Below, piece after piece: positions 1,450 to 47,342 of a DNA stretch of 64,000 nucleotides. Location: assembly GCF_006345805.1 (NCBI RefSeq), contig NC_043001.1, positions 89,714,001-89,778,000 on the forward strand, in the 5' to 3' direction. A program made the translations under genes and the position numbers. The DNA comes from Octopus sinensis. Its lineage: Eukaryota. How positions within the stretch are numbered: position 1 is the first letter of the stretch; each line of letters starts with the position of its first letter. The notes beneath the pieces are model-generated. The model made no database searches and was not told the origin of the DNA. It worked only from the letters and a program-made list of their open reading frames with translations.

Positions 1450-1482
1450 ACCAACCAGACCAACTACACCAACATTTTTGAG
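1450..1482 (+). CDS. Microexon 1 (33 nt) of PPxY-rich gene; phase-2 reading PTRPTTPTFL
   Basis: catttcag|ACC...TTGAG|gtaaaa; length is a multiple of 3; the phase-2 frame is open and Pro/Thr-rich like the downstream microexons (phase 0 is also open). Confidence 0.5.
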
Positions 1483-4210
1483 GTAAAATCTATACATGTT
1501 CTTCTTTGTTGTCATGTGTACAAATTTCAGTTTATATTTTTTGTCAACACTGTCACATCACTGAAGACTAGACTTTCGGATCCAAAGAAATATATCGTGT
1601 CACAGTTTTAGCAATAATGTCTGTGAATACTCTTCATTCTTGTTTTGTTTTAGTATCTATAATGCAATACCACTATTCATGTGGATTATCTCAAATGTGA
1701 GCGATCTTTTTGCAGAGAATATCTTTCAAGATCATTGTAGTTGAAGGAACTGAGACTGTTAAAAAGCTCACCATCTCATCATCAAAAACCTACATCACAG
1801 GAGACAGGTTGTTGCAGCAACAGTGCTCTATAAAATTCACACAATATAAAGCTCTTCAGTGCATTGAACAATGTTGTCACTGCAGTATGGATGCTATTGT
1901 ACATATAAAGACTAATACATTCATTCATGCTTATGCATACCCTTCAACACTTGATGCCAAAACTTACACGTTGGTCAAAATAAGGAAGGAACTTTCAGAA
2001 GCTGTCATCAGAGCCATGTCTATAATACACCTATTGTCATTGTCACCATCAGGAATATAGTGAACTAATAGATATCTGGTTATCTGTTTACAATCCTATT
2101 AACCCATTAACATCCAGTGGTGCTATTGTTCACAAATGCATCCAGTAAATGAATTTTAAAAAGTATAGTTTTTGCTAACTGTAAAATTATATATCAGAAT
2201 ATCTTCAGGTAGTTGTTTGTGATTATATCAAACAATAGTGAGGATCTTTTGGCCAGTTCCTGGGAAACTGGAAGAATGAATTAGCAGCAGAATTATATTC
2301 TAAGTCTGTCATGACAGTGTTAGGGGCTCTACAGTATATTCTAAGTAGTCTGTAACCAGACGTTCTGTTCAGGTTGCATGTCATTTGTGTTCTGTGTTAA
2401 TTGGATGCTGATCTAAAATTGCAATCCTATTTCCCCATCTCACACTTTACTATGTCCCTTGTAGATACATCATGTTCTACTAAAGCATTGTAGAGACACA
2501 GAGGGAAGCAGTTCATGTGATGACATAACTCCTGTTCTTATATTCATGCTTGCATTCAAACATACCTCTACTCAGTCTCTTGATTATAAAATTAACACTC
2601 AACCTTATAACTATTTGTAATCATTTACAATATTCATCATCAATACTCATCATCATACTTGTACTCATATGAATACTCATCCCTACACAGCTACTCAGCC
2701 TCATACATGTCTTCATCCTCATAACTCTCTCTATCCATATTTCTATTCATTCTCTCTAATCCCTTTGGTCTTCTTTGCTATTGTGTCTTGTTCCTGAATC
2801 AGCATTTATGTTGTATTATGCCTGATGAGAAACAGATTATCCTTCATTTATAGTCAGCAAGTACACACACACACACGTGTGCACGCACACACACATGCGC
2901 ATGCGCACTCATGCATACACACGCACACACACACACACACATACACACACACACACACACACACCGAGCCAACTTCAATCATCAAACAATCATTATGTTT
3001 AGACACCATCTAATAATACCTCATATATTTGTAAACATTTCATTCTAGTAAAAATAATAACAAAATTTACTTTAAAACACAAAAGGGATGACTCATCTTT
3101 GATGTCATCTTTCATTTATCTAGTCTGTTGTTGTTGTTGTCACATTCTTATTGTTGTCATTCACACCGTTCCATGCATTGTCTTGTACTTTGTTGTAAAG
3201 TTCTATTTTTATTGTCATTGTGTTAAATAAATAATTATACTGGTTTAGGTTGGTGTTCCTGTTGTTGCTGTTATTATTTTTTAAACTGCTTGAATTTGCT
3301 GACGTTACTGTTTTTGCTGCTGTGTTATTGATGTTATTGTAGTTGTTAACTATGATGACAATGATGACGACAATATTAATATTAATGATGATGATGATGA
3401 TGTTAACGATGATGCAGTAAATACATAGTAAATTAAGTGTCATCTAATTTCAATTTCTGGTTGAAACTATTTCCACCTTATGAATGCTACATCCAATTTC
3501 TTCAGCTCTATAAATCTGGGAGTTCATTTCTATATAAGAAATTATGACCACCACCACTAATCATCCTCACTATTGTTGTCAACATCATAGTCCTCATCAA
3601 TGTATATGTCATCATCATTTGTACCGACATGACTATCACCACTACTACTACTGCTGCCACCACCACCAACAACAACAACACCGCCGCCGCCGCCACCACC
3701 ACCACCACCATCATCAGCATCACCATCATCATCATCATCATCATCATTATTATTATTATTATTATTATTAGAGCTACTAAAGCTGGAATGAATTTATAAT
3801 GATTGAGCAACGAGCTTGTGGTATTTAGTTGTAACCGTTTAAATTCTAAGTTCAACTTTGCCTCACATCCAGTAATGTACTAGGTTCACTTTACCTTTTC
3901 ATTCTTCTATTCCCAAAGTTTTTTTTTTTTACAATAACATTATACTTATGCAAGAAATTATTCTTATTATTGTTATTAACTCTTTTGATACCAACCTTCC
4001 TGAAATCACCTTTAGTTCCCTGATTCAATTTTCCTGTTTTAAAATTCTCCAAATTAAAATGTCATATCAAAATTTCACATTAATCTATGCTCCAAACACC
4101 ATTGTAATAATGACAAAGTTATTTAAGTAAATTTTTCACTATTTTCAAAATTAATTAAAACAAATGCAGTGTATCTTTGGGTTGATAACATAAGAATCAA
4201 TTTACTAGCA

Positions 4211-6845
4211 CATCATCATCATCATCATTATCATCATCGTTTAATGTCCGCTTTCCATGCTAGCATGGGTTGGACAATTTTGACTGAGGGCTGGTGAACC
4301 AGATGGCTGCACCAGGCTCCAATCTTGATATCTTGATCTGGCAGAGTTTCTACAGCTGGATGCCCTTCCTAACGCCAACCACTCCGAGAGTGTAGTGGGA
4401 GCTTTTTACGTGCCATTCAGGCGGTACTGGCAATGACCTCGCTTGAAACTTTTTACACATGCCACCGGCACAGGTGCCAGTAAGGCGACGTTGGTAACGA
4501 TCACGCTCGAATGGTGCCCTTTTACGTGCCACTGGCATGGAAGCCAGTTGGCTGCTCTGGCAACGATCACACTTGGATGGTGCTCTTGCCACCCTACTAG
4601 CACGGGCACAAGTGCCAGTAAGGCGATGCTGGTAATGATCACACTCGAATGGTGTCCTTTTATGTGCTACTGGCATGGAAGCCGGTTAGCCGCTCTGTCA
4701 ACAATCACACTCATATGGTGCTCTTTGCACCCTGCTAGCATGGATGCCAGTCATCGAATTTGATTTTGATTTCGATTTCACTTGCTTCAACAGGTTTTCA
4801 CAAGTAGAGTTTAGTGACCAAAGAAGGAAAAGGTATGCATAAGCGGGCTGGTTATGCTCCTGGCATAGGCCACAGGTTATGGTCTCATTTGGCTTGCTGG
4901 GTCTTCTCAAGCACAGCATATTTCCAAAAGTCTCGGTTGCTAGTCATTTCCTTGGTGAGGCCTAATGTTCGAAGGTCGTGCTTCACTACTTCATCCCAGG
5001 TCTTCCTGGGTCTGCCTCTTCAACAGGTTCCCTCAACTGCTAGGGTGTGGCACTTTTTCACACAGCTATCCTCATCCATTCTCGCCACATGACCATACCA
5101 GCACAGTCGTCTCTCTTGCACACCACATCTAATGCTTCTTAGGTTCAACTTTTCTCTCAAGGTACTTACACTCTGTCGAGTATGCACACTGACATTACAC
5201 ATCAATCGAATCATACTGGCTTCATTCCTTGTGAGCTTATGCATGTCCTCAGCAGTCACAGCCCATGTTTCACTGCCATGTAGCATGGCTGTTCGTACAC
5301 AAGTCTCATACGGTCTACCTTTTACTCTGAGCGAGCGGCCCTTTGTCACCAGCAGAGGTAAGAGCTCCCTAAACTTTGCCCAAGCTATTCTTATTCTAGC
5401 AGCTACACTGCTACACTTTCAGCGCACCCTCCTCTACTACTGACTTGGTCACCTAGGTAACGGAAGTTATCAACTACTTCTAGTTTTTCTCCCTGGAATG
5501 TGGCGGAAGTTGTTATCTGCACATTTTCAGTGTTTATTGCTCAGGAGCATCTCCCACATACAAAAACTATCTTCCCAGTTAGCCTTCCTTTGATATTATT
5601 GCACCTCTTATGTGTCCATAGCTTACACTGGGTACATCTTATAGAGTTTCTACCTACGCTTCTACTACAGATCGAGCAGGGCCATCTACCTGAAGAAATT
5701 TGTGGTTTGCCTGCCTTCCTACTTATTAGGACTTTGGTTTTAGCTAGGTTGATTCTAGGGCCCTTCGATTCTAATCCTTGTTTCCACACTTGAAACTTCT
5801 CCTCTAGTTCTGATAGTGACTCAGCAATTAGAGCAAGGTCATCAGCATAGAAGAGCTCCCAGTGGCATCCTGTCTTGAATTCCTCCATTATTGCCTGGAG
5901 GACTATGATAAATAGGAGGGGGCTGAGGACTGAACCTTGGTGGACCCCTACCTCTACTCTGAATTCTTCAGTGTACTCATTGCCAACCCTCACCTTACTT
6001 ACAGCATCCCTGTACATGGCTTGCACAGCTCTCACTAACCATTCATCTATCCCTAGTTTCCTCATTGACCACCAGATAAGGGATCGGGGGACCCTGTCAA
6101 AGGCTTTCTCCATGTCAACGAAAGCCAGGTACAGGGGTTTATCTTTGGCTAGGTATTTCTCCTGCAGCTATCTTACCAGAAATATGGCATCAGTGGTGCT
6201 TTTCCCTGGCACAAAACCAAACTGCATCTCATCCAAGCTGACTCTCTCCCTAATCAGTTGGGCTATAACCCTCTCTGTAACCTTCATTACCTGATCCAAC
6301 AGCTTGATACCTCTGTAATTATTTGTATCTAAAGCGTCACCTTTACCTTTGTAGCAGTTGACTATTATGCTGCTACACAAGATATTGGGTACGACTCCTT
6401 CGTGTATCACCTGGTTAACTATACGGTGACTAGGCTATAGCCGACACTGCCAGATATTTTTGAGCATCTCTCCAGTAATTCCTGATGGGCCTGGGGCTTT
6501 CCCTGTCTTCATACTTCTAATTGCCTTATCTACCAAGGTACTGTCAACTCGGATAGCTGGTCCCTCTGTTGGGTCAACATTTGGCAGACACTCTTTCTCC
6601 CATTCATTTTCTTTATTCAGCAACCTTTCATAATGGCATCTCCAAACCTCTCTCTTTGCATCCTCATTTAGAGCAAGTGAACCATCATCCATGCGAACAC
6701 ATTTCTTTCCTACCACATCACGATTCTCTCTCACGTACTGTCTTGCAACACGAAATACCTCAAATCTTTGGTCCTCACAGTGCAGAACATTGGCAAATTT
6801 TTTCTTATCTGCTTCCCCACTGGCTAAATAAATCTGCCCTGTCCT
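4211..6845 (-). mobile_element. 5'-truncated, frameshifted RTE-clade LINE (RT + PHD-like finger + 3' UTR tandem repeats + (ATG)n tail)
   Basis: ORFs 6435-6734, 6168-6410, 5541-6113 and 5020-5349 give NYRGIKLL, QFGFVPGKSTTDAIF, KAFDRVPR, GVHQGSVLSPLLF, YADDLAL and MLHGSETW, typical of RTE ORF2; ~75-bp tandem repeats at 4380-4740; CAT-repeat tail at 4211-4238. Confidence 0.93.
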
Positions 6846-8341
6846 GCAAAATTTCAGGCCTTGTGCCTATAATAAAAAAGATTGTTTGCAGAATGGATTA
6901 TGTTACAAAGAGGAAATGTAAAATATTGCCACATTTAAAATTAAAATGATATTTATATTTTATTATCATCATCAACATCACATCATCATCATTGTCACCG
7001 TTGTTGTCGTCATCGTCATCGTCGTTGTCATAATCATCATCATTTAACGTCCATGTTCCATGTTGTCATGGATCAGTCTCTGGCAACTAAATATGCAACA
7101 GTATAACTATGGAGTGTATAACCAGGTTATCACTGCCTCCAAAACTGTGACATCTTGTTTTGTAAATAGATATATGAAGTTGAAAAAGAAATGTTGTTGA
7201 TGAATAGGCTGTGTGAGATCTATTGGATGTTTTGTTAAGGTGAAGTACAATGGAAATGAAAATGCAACTGACAAACAAATATGTTGGTTCTCCATATAAA
7301 ATATTATATGTTGTGGTGTCGGGGAATTGGCATGGTTTTATAGTAGATGGTGGATGTGATTTAGAAACATAGGTAGAAGAAGGTGGAAGGAGACCTGAGA
7401 TGCTGTTTTATAGGACCTGTAACAATGTTGTTGATGATGATGACAACAACAATGATGATGATAATAATGATTGATATTGTTATATATAGATTGTTATAAC
7501 AATAATAGCCATGATGTTGATGATAGAGAGAAATAGGATGTTGAAGGAAACAACTAGGTTTTATTTCATAACTGGCATTTTTTGCAAAATCTTGTATCAT
7601 GAGAAAAGGAAAAAAGAATTGAAGATTCTTTCACTTTACCTTCTTTCTTCTCCTTACATACAAAATATTCCCATTTTTTTTTTTTTTTGTGTTGCAAGTT
7701 CATAAATGTGTACAAAACTGCTTTATTGATAAACATCTTAAAGTTTGGTGCTGATGCTGTAAACTTCTCAGTGAATGTTGAAACTTGTTATGATAAATGG
7801 TGCAACTTGCTGTCAATAATGCCACTTAATATGGATTTTGCCGTTGATGGTAAAATATGAAGTAGATATTGCAGTGTGCAGTATATGGTTTATGACTTAA
7901 TGTTGATGGTTAGAGATGTAGTCAATAATTCTATGTACAATAGATAATATAACTTTCAAATAATATTGCAACTTAGTGTAAGTCAGCATTGTTGTTACTA
8001 ACAGTCGTGTGATTGAAAACTGGTTCTTTGCATTTGCTTGTATCACATTCCCAATAATAACCTATTAATTCCTCTCTTGATTTTCATTCAACTTCATTTG
8101 GGCCTTGTAGGATTAGAACTGAAGTTTCTTTTCCTAATGTCAGAAATTGAATATTTGCAGAGAAGTGACAATTATTTCATTTAGCCAGTACACTGATATG
8201 AAATATAATGTAATGTTAAGGGATTCATAACTGATTGCACTTAACTCAAATTTCATGGACAGGACAACTATGTATCATAGATAATATTCCTAGATGACCT
8301 GGTACCTTTAACAGACAGATTGGTTGACTGAGACAATTTAG

Positions 8342-8392
8342 AATTAGGAGAAATTCCCCAAATACACCTGATGAGATAGAATTACAAATGAG
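8342..8392 (+). CDS. Possible extra phase-2 microexon (IRRNSPNTPDEIELQM)
   Basis: Good donor GAG|gtaatc and an open phase-2 frame with SP/TP motifs, but the acceptor lacks a pyrimidine tract (alternative AGs at 8332, 8341, 8347). Confidence 0.25.
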
Positions 8393-9986
8393 GTAATCCT
8401 TCTGTGAAGTAAATCCCAGCTACTGCAAAGCATGGTGCTGCATCAGTTATAACTGTCAAGTGATGTTTTGTGCCAGCCAGTCACTTGATATACATAGACT
8501 GCAATGACACGGACACCAGAAGAAAGAAAAACAGAACTGTTCCAAGAAAACCTAGCACTAAATTTTCCAGAAACACCTCAAATACGTGAGAGCTTTTTTG
8601 ATATGAGTGGTAAGATCTGCAGCAGATTGATCATGCTAGATTGAGCATTCTGCCTCATATGTTTCACAGTGCAGGAGGACTTTAAGTCTAAATAAGTAAT
8701 ATGCTGGAGCCTAGCGGCAGGTATTTAAAGGGAAAAATTTGACAAGTCAGTTAGTCAGTGGCTGACACTCGCTGATGATACATTGAAGAGGCCAGGAAAC
8801 AGCAGAAAGAAGAAGAAAGAAGACATGCACCCAACACCAGAGCTGAAGACACCTCCGAAAGTAGGGGCCTCGCCACGTCAAAACGGTAGAGGAGTAGGGG
8901 CCGAAACCGGACGTGGTTCCTCCTGATGATGTCTTGAGCTAACTGGATCCTATAAAGGAGCTGTTGTGGTAGCAGACCACGAAACATGGTTGTAATTCCT
9001 CCATATATGTCTTCTAAACTCTTGTGCTTATTACAATATGTTAAGTTGATGTGAGATATTTGTCACCCCAGACAGGAAATTGTTATTTTGTAAGTACAAT
9101 ATTCTACAATATTCTAGTATCCATGCTCTGATAGCTTGGTGAGCTATGGAAATGTAAAATTTTGAATTAAATCTATGCAGCAAGACTCCTGTTGTGTGTT
9201 TGAGCACACATCAAATATATGGTAGTGTAAGTTTGTTCCAGTTTACCTTGGAATTGTGATATAACATGCCCATGCAACTTGGAAAGAATGGTGTGATGTA
9301 CTAGTCACTGTGGCATTATTACCAACTTTGTAAATTGACTTCTGTGTTGTCTTATAAACAACATAACAAAGGATCAGGATCAGTGACAACATATTATGCA
9401 ACAAACCAGTTCCACATATGGCAGCTTGGAAATATAAATGTAAAACCAAAGATTTCATATATTTACTTTTACAATTTACATTTCAAGTTCAAATATGGCC
9501 AACCTTATTATTGATTTTTTTCTGGTAGTAAATAAATAAATACTTGTAATATAATGAAGTTGATTAAATTACACCCCTTTCAAAAAAAAGTCTTATGGCT
9601 ATTTAAAACAAATGGTTATTAAACTTGTTGTGGTGAACTGATTACTAAGTCATCTAGTTTTCCCTGTACCATTTTCCCTTTCTATCAGCCACACTAATGT
9701 AACTCTGCACCTTACTCTATTCCTCACCGATTTATATTTCTTACTTTCTCATGTGTCTGTTACTTAAACCATACCTCATACGATTACTATTATACACACT
9801 GCAACCACTCACAATGACACTCTCAGGATTCACATTATCCCTGCTTACATCATAACTAATACCACTGACACCAGCTATTCAAATCACTGCCACTGCTACT
9901 ACCACTAACACCTATGATATCAGCACCACTCAGTGTTTGACTCAGTAATGTACCAGTGCTGTTTCAAATTTCTATTTTACTTACAG

Positions 9987-10022
9987 TATCCAGTACAGCC
10001 CTGGCCCGCCATCTTACTCCAG
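9987..10022 (+). CDS. Microexon (36 nt) encoding IQYSPGPPSYS (PPxY motif 1)
   Basis: ttctattttacttacag|TATC...TCCAG|gtaacc; GC-rich island in AT-rich intron; phase 2 to phase 2. Confidence 0.75.
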
Positions 10023-12218
10023 GTAACCCACACTTCTAACACTTACCTAAATTTTTCAACTGCCTTGTTCCTGGTGGAGCTGCTTACATTCTAATAATAT
10101 CAGTAGGTTTCTGATATATCTTGAATATAAACCCAACCAACATTGAAATATTCTAGGATGGTGGGAACACTTAAATCAAAATTCTGTGGAGAGTTACCTT
10201 TGTATAAATCCGGATTTAGATATACAAGAAAACCAAATCACACAGCCAGCCATGTATGATGTCTACCAAACTTCCACAAATACCTAAACATATAACAGCA
10301 CACTGCAACAATACTACAACAAGAACAAATACATTCCCTGTACTATATGTTCACTCGTCATAAACATGTTAATACATTAAGAACACACTATAACATTAGA
10401 ACAACACAGATTTAGGTACTCCATCTCTCAGTTCAAAATGGCACACACACTCTTACACTCACACACACTTCACAAACACATTTACACACACAAATATATG
10501 TACATGTGTACATTAAAACATTGCGGCATCAAAAATTGTATTCGGTCCACAGTATCGCATGCAAAAATATTTCTACTTTTGTTGTGGACTTTAAACAAAA
10601 TTAATGGTAAGACGGATGTAATATTACATAGCAAATCATTGAATGATAGAATGTGCATCATGGCTTTTACACTTGACTTAAGATTGAAATTAGTAGAGTT
10701 GTGAGTTGCTCCTAATTGTTCAATCATTTACTTTCTTCTGATCTGATCAAGCAGAGCTGATCACAGGTGAAAAAATCTTTTTCTTTTCTTAGTTGAATGA
10801 AAAGGATTAGAACCTATGATGTCTGTAGGTCCTCAGAGAGTGGTGTGGGTTGAATCCTTGTACAAGGGGCTGCTGTAAAGTTCTTGGCTTTAAGGGTATC
10901 ACAAGAGGCCTGGTTGGAAGCCCAACCTTTCACAGAGCTTAGAAAAACTGCTGCAATAAGCATGTAAATCTGAGAGGGGAATATATTGAATAAAATCAAA
11001 ATTCACTGATCCTCATGTATTTTCTTTTACCCAAAGCTGAAGGAACAACATAGAACTGGTAAAAATTCAAAGAGCTCCAGTTTTGAGTAAAAATGATTGT
11101 GTAACATGTTTAGTGCAGGATTTGGAAGGATACAAAGATGTGGTTGCATTGTGTGCACTAGGCAGTTGACAGTTTGTAATTTGTTTGTTTGGTTGAACAG
11201 AAACCATTCTAATAGTGGGAGAGAGAGAGAGAGAGAGAGAGAGTAAACTATGCCTGTGAGCCAGTAGTTGTCATGTGTTGATGAGTGAATCATTAGTAAT
11301 CAGTCAGAGCCTTACATGTAATATAGAATATGGAATATATGTATGTGTCTCTGATCTAAATATGTGAGAAGTTTACAATGTGGGTCATATTTGAACCTTG
11401 TAGAATGTCAGCAAATGATAATGGTTCAAATATCTTTTAGTTCTGAAGAGAAATATCCTTTGCGATTCACTTTTGAAAATGCTATTTTTCTGAGGTTGCA
11501 AAAAGAAATTATCAGAGACTGGGAGTGAAATCTCTTAGTACTTTGTAACTTTGAGGGCTTTCACTAGGTGTTGTTTAAATGGAGAGTGAGTGTAATAAAA
11601 ACCTTTTCCTTCATATGTGCAGTAACTGTGTGTCACTGTGCCATTAAAGGAGACCAAAGTTATTTGTTGATTCTCAACCAACAACATTAGTGTGATATTC
11701 AAAGTTAACGTGTGAGTCATTCTACCCTACTAATTCTTCTGAGTATTGAATGGTTGGTTACTTATCTGACTCATACTCGTAGATTCAATATATTATTATA
11801 AACTGCCATAATATGTGTTCCATATTACATATCAAAGCTGATTGGAGTAAAAGGACTGGGCAAAAGCACTATTGAAGAGATATAGAAATTCTTTTATTTT
11901 CATTAAAGCATCATTGCAAAATGTTGGGCTACTCCTTATTATGTAATCATTGTAAAATGGGCATTAGCACCCTTGATATGGTCATCCAAAAAGTTTTAAT
12001 TAATTAAATGGGCAATGCAATTGAGAGTGAGTTTGATCTTTGGCAGCATGGGCACAACTCCTGACATGCTTCAGTTTTAATAGACTGCTTCAATAAAGTG
12101 TGCACATATGTGTGTGTCTGTGAATGTATTTGTGTGTGTGTGTGAGTTTGTCAGTCCATTTGTCCATCATTTGTTTGTATTGGATCTGTGAATCAAATGG
12201 TATTATTTCTATTGACAG

Positions 12219-12254
12219 TACACCATACAGTCCTCTGCCACCAGTGTATACAAG
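12219..12254 (+). CDS. Microexon (36 nt) encoding TPYSPLPPVYT (PPxY motif 2)
   Basis: tattatttctattgacag|TACA...ACAAG|gtaaac; same length, phase and YSPxPPxY pattern as 9987-10022. Confidence 0.75.
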
Positions 12255-12946
12255 GTAAACCTATACACTCCCACCAGAACAGCTTTCTCTAGCACTATAC
12301 TGCATACTAAGCCTTAACTTTCATGTGAGAGAAGATCTGCACTTATGTAAACTTGATATCTCAATCCAGTATAATGTACAATATCCCATATCTTGTATTA
12401 TTGTATAGTATATCACATCCTATCGTAACATGTGCCTCACATCATTGCAATATACAGCATTATACTGTCTATATGTTCGTCACAATACAGTGACTACTAT
12501 CACTGTACTGCATATATGTCTGCCATAATATAGCAACAAACTAATCACTATACTGTCTAGCTTTCTATCATAGTATAGTAACATATCAATCACTGTATTG
12601 TAGTATATCCATCAGTAATGTTAATATATTCACCACCACATCTATACTTATATTATCTACTCTAAGGTATATTTCTTACAGTTGTAACAAATACTCACAA
12701 CTCATATGTTTCTATCCATATCTACTATTATAACACAGTCACCATTCCATTTTTTAACAATCAATGCTTTTCCTTTATTTCTGTATCAATCCCAATATCC
12801 TCCTCTCCTGATACGATAACCCTTTAGAGCCACTATTCTTATGTTGTCACCAATTTCATACAAAATAGACACTCTTTTGCACAAAAGTCTTGTCCATCTT
12901 TAAATTTGGTCATCTAATTGTCTACTCTATCTTTATTTCTCATTAG

Positions 12947-12982
12947 TGCTCCAGCCACACCACGGCCATTTTTCTTTGGCAG
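12947..12982 (+). CDS. Microexon (36 nt) encoding APATPRPFFFG
   Basis: tctttatttctcattag|TGCT...GGCAG|gtatgt; phase 2 to phase 2; joins in frame to the exon at 20807. Confidence 0.75.
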
Positions 12983-13604
12983 GTATGTTTATTTCATTCA
13001 TCTTTAACAATATTAGCGTGAAAATTTGGCAAATATTGTTGAGAGATCAAATTTACAAACTTGGTTTCAGTTTTTGTGTGGAGTTCATTTAAAATCTTAT
13101 ACACTGCTGATACCCTTGAGAAAGTCATAAATATCACCGTATTTCATATACTTCTCATTTGGAGATCTTGTGCTGACATAAATTATTATATATTATATAA
13201 ATTCATACCTATGTATTTTATACATACATACAAACATATATATTTGTTGCTGCCCTAGTGCCAAAATGTGAAACCATTATTATTATTTGAGTTGAAGAAA
13301 CAGAACAATAAAAGAGTTATATCCTTGCTATCAACAACACATTTACCCATTCCCAGACAAAATCAAAATCATCAGTGTCCTCAATGTGACTTCATAGCAA
13401 AATCCATACCTGGACTCAAATTACATTCATGCATCCATCACAAACAGATGCAGCTTCATTTATTCTTTTATTTTTAAAGTTGTTCTTTACTTTGTCTCAT
13501 TATTTTTCTTTCAAATCCTCTCCTTCAAACACTCATATGTCAAAATTGATGGGAGTGACCAACTACCACCACCACCACTACCATCATCATCATCATCACA
13601 ATTG

Positions 13605-13800
13605 TTAACATGCCAGACAAAATGCTTAGCGGTATTTCACCTGTTGCTATGATCTGAGTTCAAATTCTGCTGAGGTTGACTTTGCCTTTCATCCATTTGG
13701 GGGTCAATAAATTAAGTACCAGTTATGCAGTGAGTCAATGTAATCGACTTTCCCACTCCCACTAAGTTTCAGGCCTTGTGCCTATAGTAGAAAGGATTAT
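13605..13800 (+). mobile_element. SINE family A copy
   Basis: GAGTTCAAATTC B box followed by the GACTTTGCCTTTCATCC...AAATTAAGTACCAG core shared with 844-1073. Confidence 0.7.
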
Positions 13801-13912
13801 TATTATGAATTTTTTCTTATACATACACACAAACTTATATATAATATATATATATATATATTTATAGAGAGAGAGTGAGAGAGAGAGAGAGAACAAAGTG
13901 TATGTATGCTGC

Positions 13913-13958
<46 letters not shown>

Positions 13959-13959
13959 A

Positions 13960-14360
13960 TATATAAAATACAAAATAGGACAAGAACGCAAAACATCCAG
14001 ACAACTAGGTGATACAAAAAGGGACAACAAAACATCTAGATAGACAATACAAAAAAACAAGGATGGGTCATTCGAAGCTTTCTATCCTCAATCAAGAACC
14101 AGATCATCCTCTCAATTTTGGATGATTAATCTTGAGATTGCTCCAATCTGGCCAGCCCAAGGAAAAACTAAGCTTAGAGCATTAGATTCCTTGGAAGAAA
14201 GCATCGAATGCATACAAAAACAAGGATGGAAAAACAGACAATGTTACACAAATATAAATACCATATAAATACTATAAAAATAATAACAGGACATAACAAC
14301 AGGTGTCTTTTGACTGGGGACGAATTGAATTCAGCTGGCATGTGTGGAAATGAAGCCTTA
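13960..14360. mobile_element. Probable Penelope-like terminal-repeat-derived fragment next to (TA)n
   Basis: Non-coding repeat with composition and microsatellite context like the other PLE-end fragments here; no ORF homology seen. Confidence 0.3.
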
Positions 14361-14542
14361 CGGCAGAGATACAAAAGTTTCACAAACACAGGGAAGAATA
14401 TTGATGTTGCACAGACTATGGTCAGATATATATATGGATACACAAATTTCACAAACTCAGGGAAGAATATTGATGTTGCATGGACTATAGTCAGACTCAA
14501 AAAGGGAGCTAGCAGTCTGGCCTATGATATATATAATTGGCA

Positions 14543-14601
<59 letters not shown>

Positions 14602-14995
14602 TTGTTCAAGTTTAATAAAATTTGATATGTACTCAATGCATGAAGTATCATTGTTGGGCCTAAGGCCCGATGAAGTGCCTTTCACAGGAGCTAGCTTAAA
14701 AGCCACTTTTAAGTGTGTGTATGTGTGTGCAGGTGGGTGATTACACTATATTTGTAAATAAGTGTCACTGTCACGCAAGTGGAGTTTTTGTTTATAGTCT
14801 TCCAAAACATATATGTCTAGAAATGGAGAAATATTACCTAGCTTGGAAACAGGTGTGTGCTAGTAACATGTAAGGCATTCAGTTGTAGAAAATTTGTCTC
14901 AGCAAATTTTGTCTGACCCATGCTCCCATGGAAAAGTGGATACTAAAATGACAATGATGATATACAGGCATGTGTGTGTGTGTGTATGCGTGCAT

Positions 14996-15047
<52 letters not shown>

Positions 15048-15624
15048 ATGCCTTCTTCCTGTCATAATATTTGCATGCTGATTGAAAAGCAAGTCACTTC
15101 TTATACAAGCAGTGTCAGTTGTTAGCAATCTTCTGATGAGACATGTTTGGCTTTTGAGCTGTTTTTTCTTAATGGATAATTTTAAAGGAAATATTAGTTT
15201 TTGTTTGGAAACAGGTGAGAGTTGGTAATAGAAAAAGCATTCAGTGGTAGAAATTATTGTGCTTAAGTTTCATCTGATCCATGCAAGCACAGAAAAACAA
15301 GCATTGAAACAATGATGATGATAATGATGTGTGTGTGTATGTGTGTGGTGGTGGTTGGGGTATGTGTTTGTATTTATTTCACTTCTTGAGAACATATGAC
15401 TATAGCACAATTTTAAGTAGTGTTAAGCTTTTGAAATTTATAGATTGTCAGTTATCTTAACAACATATGTAAATACTCCCTAATATTTGCTCTAATCTAA
15501 CATTTCATATTTTCTTGATCTATCTTGATCTATTTTTTACGTTGTGTCTTTTATTTTCATTTCATTTCAAGCTTACTGTCATTTTGTTGACAATCATTTA
15601 TTGCCTATATTTGGAATTTTATAA

Positions 15625-15765
15625 TCATCATCATTGTTTAACGTCCACTTTCCATGCTGGCATCGGTTGGACAGTTTGACTGAGGACTGGCAAACCAGAA
15701 GGCTGTACCAGGCTCCAATCTGATCTGGCAAGGTTTCTACAACAGGATGCCCTTCCTAACGTCCT
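15625..15765 (-). mobile_element. RTE 3'-tail fragment
   Basis: catcatcattgtttaacgtccactttccatgctggcat... matches the 3' end of the RTE LINE at 4211-4380. Confidence 0.7.
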
Positions 15766-15892
15766 GTTTTAAAATGTACACTGACAGGTGATTGTGCTTG
15801 GTGTTGTGTTACCTCACTACTCATCTGAGCGGGGTAATGTTTCTGGATTGTCTGCTGTTGTAAATTTTCAATACCTCCATTTCATTACCTCC

Positions 15893-16362
15893 ATGAGTCA
15901 TTAATATGCAGGAGGATGTAAAAAACGATTGTATTTTCATAAATGCAATATTTATGGTAATTTTGTCTGGTGTAAATAGAAAATAACTATGGGTGAGACC
16001 AAACCATTTGAAAACCAAACTCATCTTTCCATTATTATGTTGACAACTGTCATGTAGATAGATCAATTCTTATGGAACATTTGTTACTTGAGTGTGAGAT
16101 ATTTTGATAGAATATTTAATAATGGATGTTGCTGTCACTCTTATTGGTTATGGTTTTCTTACTGAAAAATGAATTAAGGTTTTAAGCAGACCCTTCATGG
16201 TACAATCAGTAAATATATGGTTCAACATATATCTTTTCACTATAAAATGAGTCATTAATATGCAGAAAGATGTAAAAAACAATTGTATTTTCATAAATGC
16301 AATATTTATGGTAATTTTGTCTGGTGTAAATAGAAAATAACTATGGGTGAGACCAAACCATT
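15893..16362 (+). repeat. ~115-bp direct duplication (15893-16009 and 16248-16362)
   Basis: atgagtcattaatatgcag...gggtgagaccaaaccatt present twice with few mismatches. Confidence 0.85.
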
Positions 16363-16859
16363 GTGATAGTTGCAGTAATCATTGTCATTTAACTGTTTCT
16401 TTTGTTAGACATGTTCCTTCATTGAGTTTCATATAGGACTGAACTATGCCTATTCATAGAACTTACAGTAAGGTAAATGCAGCCAATGTATGAAGAGCAA
16501 TTTACTATATCTTTTTACATAGAGATCACTATGATAATGACAATGATATGAATAATGATGATGATAATGACAATAACTATAGGTTTTTTTCCTTATTATT
16601 GTCATCCAGGCCCATTCATTCAGACAATAAAATGTATACAAAGGTGTTACAAAATAGGTGGAGACGAATGAAAGAGAATTAATTATACATAAACAAGGGG
16701 CACACTAAAAACACTAAGCAGTATATTGAAGCATGTTAATTTTCTCAATTTTTAAAAAATTATGCTAAAAAATGAAACATATATGTATGTATGTATGTAT
16801 GTGTGTGTGTATGTGCGTGTGTGTGCGTGCGCATATAAATTAACTGTTATATCCATACA

Positions 16860-16891
<32 letters not shown>

Positions 16892-17234
16892 CATATATAC
16901 ATACTAATTTTTATTTATGGATTAACAAGACAACCGATGATTCCATGTGAAAAACTTTTCCACAATCCTCAAGTGATCCACTTGAGAATGTTGGTAATTG
17001 TCTCCATTTTGGATGAGAATGCTGGTAATCACCTCTATTTTGGATGAGAATACATGAGGTTATGCTAGTGTATGTGGGATTTCAAAATAGATACACAGAT
17101 CAGCAGAGGTGACTTATAAGACTTTTTTAATGGTTATCTCTCTTGCATTGGCCCTGGATTTTTGCAAGAATTTACATTCATCCTAAATGATTAATTAATT
17201 TGTTAATTATCTTATGTCAGAACGTTCATGCACA

Positions 17235-17286
<52 letters not shown>

Positions 17287-17653
17287 AACAGCATGTGTTT
17301 GTTGGTGTTTGAGTATGTAAATGTTTTATCATTTATGGTATTTCACAGGTTTAGAACACAAAATTAGTCCATGAAGCTGAAAGTTCACAAAAATATTTAG
17401 AAGTTCATATTCATATATTTTTATAAATCGTGTAATGACATGAGTATTTGTTATATATATTTGTATAGTTAAGTATTTCAATATGAGTTTCTGGAGTTTA
17501 TCCCTGTAATGTATATTATGTATGTAACTGATATTCAAAAGTTTACCCAGATTGGGTTGGTGGCTAGGTGGGTGAGGGGTCATGCTTGAAGTTTCAAACT
17601 TTAAATTGTTGTTTGTGCTTATAAAGGAGAAGGTTTCTTCACTAATATTAAAA

Positions 17654-17945
17654 ACTACCAGTATCGCCCGGCGTTGCTCAGGTTTGTTTTGACCCTTTAG
17701 AATTGGTATTTTTGAAAAGTAAAAATTTTGCATTATGTAGCTTGTTATTCTCTTTAAGTGAACATTTTTCTGGTTGAAATACACCGAAAAATGGCAACAC
17801 AGCAGTCAAAAAATCGTAATAAATAGGGATTTTCATAGAAAAACAGCACCTTTTTGATGTAAATAATTTTTGGTGTTAACATGGTCCGATTTGAATTTTT
17901 TTTCTACGGAAGGAAGAGCAAGTCTTCTATCATACTCTCAATTTT
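17654..17945 (-). mobile_element. Non-autonomous Helitron-like fragment (3' end)
   Basis: Minus strand ends ...CCTGAGCAACGCCGGGCGATACTGGTAGT, a GC-rich hairpin before a CTAG-like end, related to the end of the 19834 element. Confidence 0.45.
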
Positions 17946-17949
17946 GGTC

Positions 17950-18915
17950 AACTTGCACTGCAGGGTCTTGGAGGAGATAGTGTTAGTTGAAGGCTACCAA
18001 ACCTGCCATACACAGACAACTTCAGCTTTATATATAGAGAGATTTTCACTGTTGATGTTATGATATTTAATTTCTCTGTGATACATAGGTTATGTTTTCC
18101 CTCCTGTCTCCTATATTTACTGACTCTATGATGGTCAAATTTACATGGGGGTTGTCCTCTCTTTAAGGGTCTATACCATATTTGATAAAGATGTTGTATA
18201 TTTTTGTTCTTGTCTCTAAACGAAGCCAAGTGCTCCATGTATCTTTCCTCTAAGGTATTTCCAGTCATTCTGATGATAGTTTTATTGTTCCATTCATATC
18301 AGTGATGCTGGCCCTGTACACCAATTCTTTTTCCAAGAACATATTCTTTAGGACAATTATTGAGGGATCTCCAATTACAAGATCTAATGTTCCTAATGTC
18401 ATTATTCTTATTTGAATGAGAACCATTGGTCCTATGTTAGGGAGGCAACTATAGCTAACTTTAACTGTATTTTTGTAAAATATCATGTGATATTTATATG
18501 AGTATGGAAAGTAGGTATCTGTGAGTTCCAGAAAATGTCTAGCTATATTTGTAGTGACATTCTTGTTGTATGGAGAAGTATAACAATATTTTTCTATGTC
18601 TATGTCTTTTCAGTCTATAGATGTTTGGTTTAAGGTAGGTTGTACTATTCTTAAAATTGGACCTTACTTGATGGATATGTAGAAGTGCAACCATTGAATG
18701 GTTCAAGGAAATTAAAGATAAGCCCAAATGTAAATTCATTCAGTTTGACATTGTGGAGTTTTACCCATTGATCTTCTAAGATCTCCTAAAGACACTTGAA
18801 TTTAGTAAAGTATATACAACCATCACTGACAAGTATATAATTTATACCAGCATTCTCAAGTGGATTGCTTGAAGATTGTGGTGATTTTTTCTATATGAAA
18901 CCATTGGTTGTCTTG
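17950..18915 (-). mobile_element. Degraded Penelope-like element (GIY-YIG endonuclease region)
   Basis: Fragments IFYKNTVKVSYSCLPN, LVYRASI, MTGNTLEERYMEHLASFR and LCITEKLNI match the Penelope linker and GIY-YIG region. Confidence 0.75.
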
Positions 18916-19833
18916 TTAATTCTCCTTAACTAAAGAACATTTACCTACTAAATGTGGTGTAGAGCACTCGTTCTCACTGTTTGATACTATTGTATATGCG
19001 TACATACATACATACATACATACATACATACATACATACATACATACATACATACATACATGCATGCATGCATGCATACATACATACATACATGCATGCA
19101 TACAGATATAATTAAAAGGGATATAAATTAAAGAAAACACAACTGAATTAGGTTAGGGCACCCCCTCAGCTCTGATCGTCTCCAACTTTCCCTAGTACTT
19201 TATCTATATATTGAAAGGTTCTTGTCAAGAATCAAAATTAAATTGATAGGAATGTTAAATTTTGAAAATTACACCAAAATTCTTGATAGTCAAAATGTAG
19301 CTCATGATTATGTGAATATAAGGAAGATGTTCCAGTTGTATTGAGTGGAAAATTAAGTAGAGTACCTTACAGTTTTAGTTTCATCTCTTTATGTTCTAAG
19401 TTCAAATTACACCAGTGTAACATTCTTCTTTTATTCTTCTAGGGGTAATAAAATAAAGCACCAGTCAAGTACTAGTATTGATTTAATCAACTGATTCCTA
19501 CTGAAAAATTATAGCCTTGTGTCTGTTGTAGAAAAAATCCTTATTTCCTACCCATTCTGCTTCTTTGTGATATGTTCAAAACCTACCTGGATCATTCATG
19601 ACTGATAATTATTTGTATTTCTTCTCATATAGTGGGAGAACTTAATGTTATCAAATAAATACTTGCATACATAAGTTTGGTAATGCTAAGAGAACTCAAA
19701 ACATGTGTTCATATGTTATTTTTTATTATTAGTAATTGGCAGAAGTTAGAGAGTGGCTCAAGGGCAGAGAAGTGCCAATGCATAAAACTCTTGACCCTTG
19801 AGTCACTCTGTAACTTCTATCAGTAATTAATAA

Positions 19834-20194
19834 CTAGCACTATGACCCGGCGTTGCCGGGTCATAGTGCTAGTGCTTGCATATACAGCTGCGTGCATGTG
19901 CACATACACGCGAGTACTGTCCAAATTTCCGACCAATCACATACAGCTAGCTGGCATTCAATTGGCGTACCAAGTTTCGGGCATTTTGATTGGGTTTTGG
20001 ATAGAAAATTCACAAAAAGGCACTTCTATTGATTTTTTAATGGCTTTGCAGGGTGACTGGGGAAATGTAAAGATGTGCACGACCACCCTTGGATGGTTTT
20101 AAATGACCATAGAAAGTACGAGCCCTCTAACTGAAAATTTGTGGATTTGTATAAAGGACACACACAGAGACATTTTGCCGTTTATATATATAGA
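19834..20194 (-). mobile_element. Non-autonomous Helitron-like element
   Basis: Minus strand starts TCTATATATATAAA and ends in a perfect 18-bp hairpin terminating CTAG|T. Confidence 0.7.
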
Positions 20195-20806
20195 AATACT
20201 AAAAAAATATATACTTGTATACATATCTGTTTTGTTAAATTGTACTGTATAATACTGAATGTTGTAGTGTAACATTAAATGGTACTGGCTAGTGCAGTAA
20301 GGCATTTAATGCTACAATGTAATAATGAAGAATAGTACTAAATTGTATCAAATGTTTTGATCAAATTTTTCTTTTTGCACATTATTGACTTGTATGTAGA
20401 AAATGTTTGAAACATATGGCAGAGAGTAGTAGTAGTAGCAGCAGCAGCAGTAGTTGTAGTAGTAGTAGTAGTAAGGATGGATGGGATAAAAGTTGTGGTA
20501 GTAGAAGCAGTGGTAGGGAGCTCGAGACTGTGGTGATGTTAGTTTTAGTAGTTGTCATGGTAGTGTGAGTATTTTTAATGAAGGTGGCTGTAGTATTGAT
20601 CATGAGGTTAGTATTAGCGATGATGGTGATAGTTGTAGTAGTGATAGTAGTGTTGATAATAATTGTGGTATAAGGGCCTGTGATGGTGACAGTAAAGATT
20701 GTTATGATGGTGATAATGACGATGATGATGACGATGATGATGATCATGATGACAACTGCCATATAATCTCTAACATTTATTCCATTTTCCTCTCCCTCAT
20801 TAACAG

Positions 20807-21017
20807 CCGGCTACGAATGTACAGTGATGACCCACCACCCTATGATGTGGTCATGAATCAAGATTATGTGGTCAGTGAGACTGTCACTGAATCAATGGCA
20901 TCAGAAGAGACCGCAGTCAACTTGGATGATGAGGAGGCATTCCAGAGTGCTGATGAAGAATGCTGCCTGGAAGCACCACCTTCCTATGATGAATTTATGA
21001 GGACTTCCAGATTATGA
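20807..21017 (+). CDS. Terminal coding exon of PPxY-rich protein: (S)RLRMYSDDPPPYDVVM...EAPPSYDEFMRTSRL*
   Basis: ttccattttcctctccctcattaacag|CCGG acceptor in phase 2; two PPxY motifs (PPPY, PPSY) around an acidic stretch; TGA at 21015-21017; AATAAA at 21701. Confidence 0.85.
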
Positions 21018-39924: not shown

Positions 39925-40455
39925 GTATCTCTCTCTCTCTCTCTCTCCTTCTATCTGTCTGTCTCTTTCTTTCCCTCTCTGTCTGTTTGTCTGTCTGTCT
40001 CTTTCTTTCTTTCCCCCTCAGTTTGTCACTCACTCTCACTCTCTCTCTCTCCCTCTGTTTGTTTGTATGTCTGTCTGTCTATCTCTCTCTCTCTCTTTGT
40101 TTGTCTGGCTGTCTCTCTTTCTTTCTCTGTCCGTCTGTCTCAATTTCTTTTCCTGTCTGTCTGTCTGTCAGTATCTCTCTCTCTCTCACTTCCTCTATCT
40201 GTCTATCTTTCTTTTTCCCTCTCTGTCTGTCAATCTCTCTCTCTCTCTCTCCTTCTGTTTGTCTGTCTCCCTCTATCTTTCCCTCTCTGTCTGTCTATCA
40301 GTCTATCTATCTCTCTCTTTCCCTTTCTGTCTGTCTGTCAGTCTCTCTCTCTCTCTCACTCTCTATCTATCTCTCTTCCTCTGTCTGTCTGTCTCTCTTT
40401 CTTTCCCTCTCTGTCTGTCTGTCAGTTTCTCCCCCCTCATCTCTCTCTCTCTAAT
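39925..40455. repeat. Compound (CT)n/(CTGT)n microsatellite
   Basis: Direct inspection. Confidence 0.95.
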
Positions 40456-46271: not shown

Positions 46272-46334
<63 letters not shown>

Positions 46335-46366
46335 TGTATGTGTATATATATATGTATGTGTATATG

Positions 46367-46457
<91 letters not shown>

Positions 46458-46658
46458 TGTATATATATATATATGTATATATAATATATATATATAATAT
46501 ATGTATATATATATATATGTATGTATATATATATATATGTATGTATATATATATATGTATATATATATATGTATGTATATTATATATATATATATATATA
46601 TATTATATATTATATATATATATATGTATGTATATATATATGTATGTATATATATATG

Positions 46659-46700
<42 letters not shown>

Positions 46701-47125: not shown

Positions 47126-47160
<35 letters not shown>

Positions 47161-47303: not shown

Positions 47304-47342
<39 letters not shown>

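What the first reader, a model, noticed from the sequence alone, without database searches (positions are those of the whole stretch)
1450..21017. Gene tail built from symmetric 33-36-nt microexons, two of them carrying one PPxY motif each
Four tiny exons with good splice sites (1450-1482, 9987-10022, 12219-12254, 12947-12982) all end in AG and splice in phase 2 into the last exon. They give ...PTRPTTPTFL-S-IQYSPGPPSYS-S-TPYSPLPPVYT-S-APATPRPFFFG-S-RLRMYSDDPPPY...EAPPSYDEFMRTSRL*. Splice sites and frames are seen in the sequence. PPxY motifs bind WW domains, e.g. of Nedd4-family E3 ligases (established). Each microexon can be skipped without a frameshift, so splicing could set 2, 3 or 4 PY motifs and tune WW-domain/ligase recruitment (inference). 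The ORF track misses all four microexons, and gene predictors may too.
Basis: partly seen in the sequence, partly recalled or inferred. Interest (0 to 1): 0.8.

Follow-up and report, generated by a model that had tools for sequence, protein, structure and literature searches.

The report
Octopus PY-motif microexon cassettes, real
The four tiny exons are real, already annotated and alternatively spliced in octopus and cuttlefish; they form the variable tail of a small uncharacterised mollusc membrane protein, so that splicing gives the tail two, three or four PPxY docking motifs.

Summary
The window is Octopus sinensis CM016863.1:89,714,001-89,778,000.

I call the exons A (1450-1482), B (9987-10022), C (12219-12254), D (12947-12982) and T (20807-21017). 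RefSeq lists ten O. sinensis isoforms that differ only in which of A-D are included. Cuttlefish RNA-seq contigs assembled independently show six combinations, and these differ by exact 33/36/36/45-nt cassettes.

A-D are conserved between octopus, Argonauta and Sepia. Exon C has 0 nonsynonymous and 5 synonymous codon changes between octopus and Sepia.

The protein has two transmembrane helices and a disordered tail, and matches no Pfam or PDB family. Relatives occur in gastropods and bivalves. Those keep the two PPxY motifs of exon T (invariant in 17 sequences) but show no A-D insert, so the cassette array looks cephalopod-specific.

Splicing therefore does set 2, 3 or 4 PY motifs. Binding to WW domains or Nedd4-type ligases is still an inference. 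The exons were not missed by NCBI's predictor, although the O. vulgaris and Argonauta annotations lack B/C or C. This is a tidy, conserved new example of a known principle and is moderately interesting.

The parts
1450..1482 (+). Cassette microexon A, 33 nt, phase 2-2, encodes (R)PTRPTTPTFL. It is proline-rich with a PxxP, and has no PY motif.
   Evidence: sequence, splice sites. maps it to residues 145-154 of XP_036358819.1. It is present or absent among RefSeq isoforms and in Sepia cDNA as a 33-nt cassette. The exon and about 57 nt on each flank are conserved in Argonauta.
9987..10022 (+). Cassette microexon B, 36 nt, encodes (S)IQYSPGPPSYS. It carries PY motif PPSY at 10006-10017.
   Evidence: It is skipped in isoforms X5, X7, X9 and X10 and included in the others. 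The core YSPGPPSY is identical in Argonauta and Sepia, with 5 synonymous codon changes against Sepia. It is included in all six Sepia isoform types seen.
12219..12254 (+). Cassette microexon C, 36 nt, encodes (S)TPYSPLPPVYT. It carries PY motif PPVY at 12238-12249 and is probably a duplicate of B (21/36 nt identical).
   Evidence: Octopus versus Sepia shows 5 synonymous and 0 nonsynonymous codon changes. An unannotated ortholog with intact splice sites lies in the Argonauta genome at L011 10495-10530. It is seen only together with B, in both lineages.
12947..12982 (+). Cassette microexon D, 36 nt, encodes (S)APATPRPFFFG. It is proline-rich and has no PY motif. In Sepia it is 45 nt.
   Evidence: Its peptide is identical in Argonauta, with 2 synonymous changes. 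It appears in Sepia cDNA as a 45-nt cassette.
20807..21017 (+). Last coding exon T, encoding (S)RLRMYSDDPPPYDVV...EAPPSYDEFMRTSRL and the stop codon. It holds the two constitutive PY motifs (20832-20843 and 20976-20987), both followed by a hydrophobic residue at Y+3. The protein ends in -S-R-L, which resembles a class I PDZ ligand.
   Evidence: The acceptor and coding sequence are conserved in a decapodiform genome (70.7% over 20804-21015) and in Argonauta. P200 P201 Y203 and P248 P249 Y251 are invariant in 17 mollusc sequences.
21327..21379 (+). Conserved 3'UTR block, 90.6% identical to Argonauta, which is higher than the coding exon. It contains TGCATG.
   Evidence: It was not found in the Sepia 3'UTR.
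5541..6113 (-). Reverse-transcriptase (LINE-type) fragment inside the 8.5-kb intron between A and B. It is not part of the gene product.
   Evidence: ORF. Pfam RVT_1 E=5.7e-19.

Best explanation
Window positions 1450-21017 hold the 3' half of Octopus sinensis gene LOC115212097, annotated as an uncharacterised protein. The product is 213-260 aa long. An N-terminal hairpin of two transmembrane helices and a basic juxtamembrane helix are encoded just upstream of the window. Exon 2 ends 250 nt before window base 1.

Shown:
- The rest of the protein is a disordered, presumably cytosolic tail.
- Exon 2 and every cassette end in ...AG in phase 2. B, C, D and T begin with T or C, giving a junction Ser. 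A begins with A, giving a junction Arg. Any subset of A-D can therefore be spliced in without changing the frame.
- The spliceosome does this. Ten combinations are annotated in O. sinensis and six are seen in cuttlefish cDNA.
- The tail therefore carries the two invariant PPxY motifs of the last exon plus zero, one (B) or two (B+C) extra PPxY motifs. The spacer between the membrane and the first invariant motif is 0-47 residues long.

Inferred:
- The PPxY motifs are class I WW-domain ligands.
- The protein acts as a small membrane adaptor that recruits, and possibly activates, Nedd4-family HECT ubiquitin ligases, in the way NDFIP, ENTREP or yeast Sna3 do. Other WW proteins are also possible partners.
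- Splicing tunes valency and avidity.
- The array A-D arose in cephalopods by insertion and duplication into an ancestral phase-2 intron that all molluscs share.
For: Gene model:
- Exact sequence and frame.
- 100% match of the window to CM016863.1.
- Exon map of XP_036358819.1 on L010.

Alternative splicing:
- RefSeq isoforms X1-X10, plus O. bimaculoides, O. vulgaris and Argonauta models.
- Sepia-type Logan cDNA contigs, one of them from a Sepia esculenta run (SRR20545809), differ only by exact 33/36/36/45-nt cassettes.

Selection:
- Only the exons are conserved against Argonauta.
- Exon C shows 5 synonymous and 0 nonsynonymous codon changes against Sepia. The core of B is identical, with 5 synonymous changes.

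PY motifs look functional:
- The two motifs in T are invariant across cephalopods, gastropods and bivalves.
- They lie in a region that AlphaFold2 leaves disordered (pLDDT<50 for 113-197 and 210-243), with local confidence peaks at the motifs.

Topology:
- Predicted helices at 24-58 and 69-89, then the basic stretch RSQFARQRSLLRRYVRELYTRP. By the positive-inside rule (established knowledge) this places the tail in the cytosol.

Ancestry:
- Haliotis, scallop and Pomacea have the same intron position, with the exon ending AG|gt. Their annotated proteins have no insert, and I found no convincing microexon in that intron.

Precedent:
- PPxY-bearing membrane proteins bind and activate ITCH (PMC8811627).
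- A 16-aa ERBB4 cassette carrying a PPXY site changes Itch binding (PMC4303208).
Against: - No binding, localisation or ubiquitination data exist for this protein or any relative. All relatives are named 'uncharacterized' or 'hypothetical', and no paper mentions the LOC identifiers.
- There is no detectable homology to any known adaptor family. No Pfam model reaches its cut-off; the best matches are non-specific transmembrane ones (TMEM100, PIRT, tetraspanin). Nothing matched in the PDB.
- RefSeq XP models are computational. The ten full combinations may be assembled from junction evidence and not from full-length reads.
- I found no octopus cDNA contig that spans the cassettes. Direct transcript proof comes only from cuttlefish.
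- Tissue regulation is unknown, so some isoforms could be splicing noise.
- PPxY motifs also bind YAP/Yorkie, MAGI, WWOX and similar proteins, so the partner is not determined.
Confidence: 0.6

Rival explanations
1. The exons and splicing are as in the best explanation, but the PY motifs dock scaffold or Hippo-pathway WW proteins (MAGI, YAP/Yorkie, Kibra, WWOX) and not HECT ligases. The conserved C-terminal -S/T-x-L would add a PDZ contact, making the tail a two-handed ligand for a WW+PDZ scaffold such as MAGI. Splicing would then change scaffold valency.
For: Cephalopod and gastropod proteins end in -SRL, -TRL, -TTL, -TSL or -TQL, which fits the class I PDZ-ligand pattern. PPxY is the generic class I WW ligand and does not discriminate between partners (established knowledge). 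The Hippo pathway uses PPxY-WW contacts and alternative splicing (review PMC5867882, found).
Against: The C-terminal pattern is absent in the two bivalve sequences, which end -KDT and -NDT. No partner data exist. Small membrane proteins with several PY motifs characterised so far are mostly ligase adaptors.
Confidence: 0.2
2. The cassettes mainly act as a variable-length, phosphorylatable proline-rich spacer. The YSP and TP sites and the PxxP would serve proline-directed kinases, Pin1-type WW domains or SH3 domains. The spacer would set the distance between the membrane and the two invariant PY motifs, and the PPxY in B and C would be secondary.
For: Two of the four cassettes (A and D) have no PY motif, yet they are conserved and alternatively spliced. 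YSP is conserved in B and C, and PxxP in A, in all three lineages. The spacer varies from 0 to 47 residues.
Against: The strictly conserved part of B and C is the whole YSPxPPxY, PPxY included, under purifying selection. [ST]P sites in A are not conserved in Sepia or Argonauta.
Confidence: 0.12
3. The isoform diversity is non-adaptive splicing noise. Short exons in long introns would often be skipped by accident, and only one or two isoforms would matter.
For: Microexons are intrinsically hard to define. Gnomon can enumerate combinations. Contig counts in Sepia are dominated by one form, BCD, with 17 of 31 contigs.
Against: Length, phase, terminal AG, junction residue and peptide are conserved for all four cassettes across the octopus-cuttlefish split. 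Skipping is seen in both lineages. Several minor isoforms recur in independent runs: BC in 5 contigs, B in 5, ABC in 2 runs from different projects.
Confidence: 0.08

Closest known systems
ERBB4 CYT-1 / CYT-2 splice switch
   Same: A short symmetric cassette exon (16 aa) carries a PPXY site. Inclusion gives binding of the WW-domain ligase Itch and more ubiquitination, and skipping removes it (PMC4303208). The logic is the same as for exons B and C here.
   Different: ERBB4 has one cassette in a large receptor kinase. Here there are four tandem cassettes (two with PY, two without) used in combination, in a 213-260-aa protein whose tail is little else but motifs. The two are not homologous.
NDFIP1/2, ENTREP (FAM189A2) and similar PY-motif membrane adaptors or activators of Nedd4-family HECT ligases
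   Same: These are small membrane proteins whose cytosolic PPxY motifs bind ligase WW domains and relieve autoinhibition (PMC8811627). The two ENTREP motifs (PPSY, PPPY) are 42 aa apart. The two invariant motifs here (PPPY, PPSY) are 44 aa apart.
   Different: No sequence similarity was detected. NDFIP has three transmembrane helices and ENTREP has one, while this protein has two. No activity has been shown here. Splicing-set motif number is not a described feature of those proteins, as far as I know.
Yeast Sna3 (my own knowledge, not tested here)
   Same: A two-transmembrane hairpin protein with a C-terminal cytosolic PY motif that binds the Nedd4 homolog Rsp5. It is the closest match in topology.
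   Different: It is fungal, has a single PY motif, no splicing and no homology.
Tissue-regulated microexons that encode short linear motifs in disordered regions (animal microexon programmes, e.g. PMC8797185)
   Same: Short, symmetric, conserved, alternatively spliced exons that lie in a disordered region and carry interaction motifs.
   Different: At 33-36 nt they exceed the <=27-nt class controlled by SRRM3/4 (a threshold from my own knowledge). No consistent upstream UGC or nearby GCAUG signal was found. Tissue specificity is unknown.
Schistosome micro-exon genes (MEGs; my own knowledge)
   Same: Tandem symmetric microexons of up to 36 nt that are skipped in combination to vary a protein.
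   Different: MEGs encode secreted proteins made almost entirely of microexons. Here only the tail linker of a membrane protein is built this way.

Membership tests
Alternatively spliced symmetric cassette microexons | Very short internal exon (<=51 nt by the broad definition), length a multiple of 3, canonical AG/GT sites | tested here: met
   Lengths are 33, 36, 36 and 36 nt. All have AG acceptors and GT donors.
Alternatively spliced symmetric cassette microexons | Both inclusion and skipping are seen in transcripts | tested here: met
   Cuttlefish cDNA contigs differ by exact cassettes. There are ten RefSeq isoforms in O. sinensis. Direct cDNA evidence comes from cuttlefish only; for octopus the evidence is predicted models.
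Alternatively spliced symmetric cassette microexons | Evolutionary conservation of exon and phase | tested here: met
   Octopus, Argonauta and Sepia are compared.
Class I WW-domain ligand (PY motif) | [LP]PxY consensus | tested here: met
   PPSY, PPVY, PPPY and PPSY.
Class I WW-domain ligand (PY motif) | Lies in an accessible, disordered, cytosolic segment | tested here: inconclusive
   Disorder is predicted: pLDDT<50 for most of residues 113-243. The cytosolic side is inferred only from the basic stretch after the second transmembrane helix.
Class I WW-domain ligand (PY motif) | Motif conserved among orthologs | tested here: met
   The two motifs of exon T are invariant in 17 mollusc sequences. 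The motifs of B and C are identical in three cephalopod lineages.
Class I WW-domain ligand (PY motif) | Physical binding to a WW domain | not testable with these tools
   This needs pull-down, ITC or peptide-array experiments.
NDFIP/Bsd2-type Nedd4 adaptors (homology) | Sequence similarity to the family profile | tested here: not met
   Pfam scans of 3 and then 17 family members gave no such family at E<=1 or E<=0.1, and no model reached its cut-off.
NDFIP/Bsd2-type Nedd4 adaptors (homology) | Three transmembrane helices, with the PY motifs in the N-terminal cytosolic part (my own knowledge) | tested here: not met
   Two helices are predicted, at 24-58 and 69-89, and the PY motifs are C-terminal.
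NDFIP/Bsd2-type Nedd4 adaptors (function) | Binds and activates HECT ligases | not testable with these tools
   This needs an in vitro ubiquitination assay.
PIRT / TMEM100 two-TM families | Pfam profile match above the gathering score | tested here: not met
   PIRT scored 15.5 bits against a cut-off of 30.6. TMEM100 scored at most 16.7 bits against 34. Only the transmembrane segments match.
SRRM3/4-dependent neuronal microexons | Length <=27 nt and UGC-type enhancer close upstream of the acceptor (both from my own knowledge) | tested here: not met
   Lengths are 33-36 nt. TGC within 60 nt upstream occurs only for B in octopus and for A and C in Argonauta, so its position is not conserved.
Class I PDZ ligand | C-terminal [ST]-x-hydrophobic residue | tested here: met
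   -SRL in octopus and Sepia, -STF in Argonauta, -T[RTSQ]L in gastropods, and absent in the two bivalves. Binding was not tested.

The most novel reading that the evidence does not exclude
Coleoid cephalopods inserted a four-module cassette array into an ancient mollusc PY-adaptor gene and use it as a splicing-coded valency dial. Isoforms with 2, 3 or 4 PY motifs and different spacers would recruit or activate different WW-domain ligases or scaffolds in different tissues. This may be combined with A-to-I recoding of the transmembrane helices seen in cuttlefish transcripts. Together these would form a lineage-specific, two-layer RNA-level diversification of one small membrane adaptor.
Probability: 0.2. 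Interest if true: 0.6.

Novelty: new member of a known kind. Interest (0 to 1): 0.4.

Why it matters
Direct value:
- The result shows that a reader working without tools can recover real 33-36-nt coding exons from raw sequence.
- It flags annotation gaps: B and C are missing from the O. vulgaris models, and C from the Argonauta model.

Biological value:
- It gives an unusually clean natural system for asking how the number and spacing of PY motifs control WW-domain partners. One small protein carries two fixed motifs and two optional ones, each optional motif on its own exon.
- The arrangement has been conserved since octopus and cuttlefish lineages split.
- It assigns a testable role to a mollusc-wide protein family that currently has no name, domain or literature.

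It is not a new principle. Motif-bearing cassette exons, and the ERBB4 PY switch in particular, are already well known.

Tried and rejected
- **Joined peptide as a plain query.** The length filter hid the full-length proteins, and only a 65-aa genomic ORF (P0001) came back. I solved this by padding the query with X and using 'region'. By a typing slip the pad was 260 X, not the intended 254, so the scored region missed the last 6 residues. This had no effect on the result.
- **Profile of the last exon against 1.84 billion representatives.** It returned only P0001 and a spurious repeat protein (P0002). That library evidently lacks the octopus RefSeq proteins, so its silence says nothing about how widely the family is distributed.
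- **Walking upstream in the decapodiform genome contig L001.** The neighbouring gene calls contain in-frame stops under table 11, so I did not pursue it. No microexons lie within 10 kb upstream there.
- **Family assignment.** The Pfam, PDB-sequence and AlphaFold2 routes gave nothing. I skipped fold search because the model confidence is low (mean pLDDT 53).
- **Candidate families.** I considered TMEM52 (a weak hit on the C-terminus, E 0.07-0.2), TMEM51, PIRT and TMEM100, and rejected all of them as below threshold.
- **Splicing-regulator motifs.** GCAUG and UGC near the cassettes show no consistent or conserved pattern.
- **Extra cassettes.** 16437-16472 passes the splice filter but is not conserved in Argonauta and is in no isoform.
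- **Haliotis candidate.** L012 29767-29796 (DDKIPPVYS) has a weak donor and no support.
- **Literature.** A search for the LOC identifiers found nothing.
Full report

Yes.
- A, 1450-1482: ttcag|ACCAACC...TTGAG|gtaaaa
- B, 9987-10022: ttacag|TATCCAG...CTCCAG|gtaacc
- C, 12219-12254: tgacag|TACACC...ACAAG|gtaaac
- D, 12947-12982: cattag|TGCTCC...GGCAG|gtatgt
- T, 20807-21017: ttaacag|CCGGCTACGA...TTATGA

A six-frame scan finds the four PPxY motifs at 10006, 12238, 20832 and 20976.

A strict filter required a pyrimidine tract, no G at -3, a length of 27-45 nt in steps of three, an exon ending in AG, a GTRA donor and an open frame +1. It returns 6 hits on the + strand and 1 on the - strand, against 1.67 +/- 1.26 in second-order Markov simulations. 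Three hits (A, B and C) have at least three prolines, against 0.01 expected. D has a GTAT donor and falls just outside this filter.

**2. What is it?**

A search with the joined peptide alone found only a 65-aa ORF in a 396-kb ENA contig (P0001). That tool only considers proteins of similar length. Padding the query so that longer proteins qualified found the gene:
- Octopus sinensis LOC115212097
- O. bimaculoides LOC106881110
- O. vulgaris CAI9723227-30
- an Argonauta hians model

All are named 'uncharacterized' or 'hypothetical'.

The window is 100% identical over 24,017 bases to O. sinensis CM016863.1. Window base 1 is chromosome base 89,714,001. Mapping XP_036358819.1 (isoform X1, 260 aa) onto the chromosome gives this structure:
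- Coding exon 1 (residues 1-117) lies 4.6-4.9 kb upstream of the window.
- Exon 2 (residues 118-143...IQECP) ends 250 nt upstream of the window, as ...CCC AG|gtaaga.

So the exon upstream of the array also ends in AG in phase 2. Any of A, B, C, D or T can therefore follow it.

**3. Alternative splicing.**

The O. sinensis RefSeq isoforms differ only in cassette content:

| Isoform | Cassettes | PY motifs |
|---|---|---|
| X1 | ABCD | 4 |
| X2 | BCD | 4 |
| X3 | ABD | 3 |
| X4 | BD | 3 |
| X5 | AD | 2 |
| X6 | AB | 3 |
| X7 | D | 2 |
| X8 | B | 3 |
| X9 | A | 2 |
| X10 | none | 2 |

These are predicted models, so I looked for independent transcripts. The database holds complete ORFs from 1.0-1.8-kb Logan contigs assembled from RNA-seq runs. 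One run, SRR20545809, belongs to a Sepia esculenta study (PMC9538352). The other contigs I fetched are nucleotide-identical to it outside the cassettes. The exception is L015, which has three A-to-G changes.

The contigs carry these combinations:

| Cassettes | Contigs |
|---|---|
| BCD | 17 |
| BC | 5 |
| B | 5 |
| ABC | 2 |
| BD | 1 |
| AB | 1 |

Aligned as DNA, they differ by clean gaps of 33, 36, 36 and 45 nt, each ending in AG. The junction residue is preserved in both lineages: Arg before A, and Ser before B, C, D and T. C is only ever seen together with B. In Sepia, every observed isoform includes B.

**4. Conservation.**

Between the window and the Argonauta locus, the only collinear conserved blocks are:
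- 1393-1539 (A)
- 9947-10038 (B)
- 12203-12259 (C)
- 12900-12988 (D)
- 20757-21018 (T)
- a 3'UTR block at 21327-21379

Argonauta has an unannotated exon C with intact splice sites, encoding TSYSPLPPVYT.

Codon changes between octopus and Sepia:
- C: 5 synonymous, 0 nonsynonymous
- B: 5 synonymous, 3 nonsynonymous, all outside YSPGPPSY
- A: 4 synonymous, 4 nonsynonymous

D is identical in peptide between octopus and Argonauta. B and C share 21 of 36 nt and the pattern xxYSPxPPxYx, so they are probably duplicates.

**5. The protein and its family.**

AlphaFold2 run with a 17-sequence alignment predicts helices at 24-58 and 69-89 (pLDDT about 70-83), a helix at 97-110, and then a disordered tail. 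Confidence rises locally at the two PY motifs of exon T. After the second helix comes a strongly basic stretch, which by the positive-inside rule points to a cytosolic tail.

No Pfam model reaches its threshold. Weak hits to TMEM100, PIRT, tetraspanin and CD3-zeta cover only the transmembrane segments. The PDB sequence search found nothing.

A profile search found relatives in gastropods (Haliotis, Gigantopelta, Babylonia, Pomacea, Bulinus, Physella, Biomphalaria, Aplysia, Elysia, Plakobranchus, Candidula, Lottia, Patella) and bivalves (Ylistrum, Mytilus). All are unnamed, and none were found outside molluscs. Only the 8000 best word-sharing candidates were scored, so absence elsewhere is not proven.

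In the alignment, both PY motifs of exon T are invariant (P200 P201 Y203; P248 P249 Y251). The cephalopod A-D segment is an insertion relative to all the others.

Genomic loci of Haliotis, scallop and Pomacea show the same intron in the same phase, with the exon ending AG|gt. They show no convincing cassette in that intron, which is only 931 nt long in the scallop. The array is therefore most simply a cephalopod innovation placed in an ancestral phase-2 intron.

Cephalopod and gastropod proteins end in -[ST]-x-[LF], a pattern like a class I PDZ ligand.

**6. How it most likely works.**

Shown:
- Splicing yields tails with 2, 3 or 4 PPxY motifs.
- The spacer between the membrane and the first invariant motif is 0-47 residues long.

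Inferred:
- The motifs bind WW domains. The protein would then behave like the small PY-bearing membrane adaptors that recruit and de-repress Nedd4-family ligases. In ENTREP, two motifs 42 aa apart bind ITCH (PMC8811627). Here the invariant pair is 44 aa apart.
- Extra motifs would raise avidity or engage more WW domains. The precedent is the ERBB4 CYT-1 cassette, whose PPXY site is the Itch site missing from CYT-2 (PMC4303208).

Rival explanations:
- The partners are scaffold or Hippo-pathway proteins, possibly using the PDZ-like C-terminus.
- The cassettes act as a phospho-regulated spacer.
- The diversity is splicing noise.

None of these can be excluded without experiments.

**7. Novelty and verdict.**

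The exons and their skipping are already in RefSeq, so the gene model itself is not new. The O. vulgaris and Argonauta annotations, however, do miss the PY cassettes. No paper mentions the gene. The family has no name or domain. The principle, a motif-bearing cassette exon that tunes WW binding, is known.

I rate this as a new member of a known kind. Its attractive features are a modular architecture and deep conservation within cephalopods. Interest is 0.4.

Noticed in passing
L009 versus L015 (cuttlefish cDNA contigs of the ortholog), CDS nt 111, 222, 243. Not in the window.: The two contigs differ at only three positions in about 1.3 kb. All three are A-to-G and give I37M, I74M and I81M in the two transmembrane helices. 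Other cluster members add T8A and I37V, which also correspond to A-to-G changes. This looks like A-to-I RNA editing, which is common in coleoids, but polymorphism is not excluded.
   Followed up: partly
window 53357-53710 (-): An intact 117-aa ORF with two hydrophobic helices. It is an exact match to an annotated O. vulgaris protein and clusters with O. bimaculoides A0A0L8FU89, both uncharacterised. This is a convergent neighbour gene. The hhalign match to the PY-protein family is weak and covers only the transmembrane segments (51% probability).
   Followed up: partly
window 21327-21379 (+): A 3'UTR block 90.6% identical between octopus and Argonauta, which is better conserved than the coding exon. 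It contains TGCATG. It was not found in the Sepia 3'UTR.
   Followed up: partly
window 46276-47988: A (TA)n microsatellite of about 1.7 kb that pulls GC down to 11%. There are many other di- and tetranucleotide arrays, for example 39928-40452 (TCTC)n and 60651-60816 (ATAG)n.
   Followed up: no
window 54956-55654 (+), 49080-49415 (+), 5541-6113 (-): Two mariner-type transposase remnants (Pfam Transposase_1, E 1e-25 and 1e-17) and a reverse-transcriptase plus PHD fragment (RVT_1, E 6e-19). The last lies inside the A-B intron.
   Followed up: partly
L011 10495-10530 (Argonauta hians genome): Exon C (TSYSPLPPVYT) is present with good splice sites but absent from the only annotated Argonauta isoform. 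Likewise, no O. vulgaris model contains B or C. These look like annotation gaps.
   Followed up: yes
L012 29767-29796 (Haliotis rubra, last intron of the ortholog): A 30-nt phase-compatible segment ending in AG that encodes DDKIPPVYS, with a weak donor (GTCTAA). It could be a chance match in a 52-kb intron or an unannotated PY cassette outside cephalopods.
   Followed up: no
L001 79-540 (-) and 1195-1407 (-): Gene calls on the ENA eukaryotic contig contain in-frame stops under table 11. The caller presumably used another genetic code, so such calls on this contig are unreliable.
   Followed up: no
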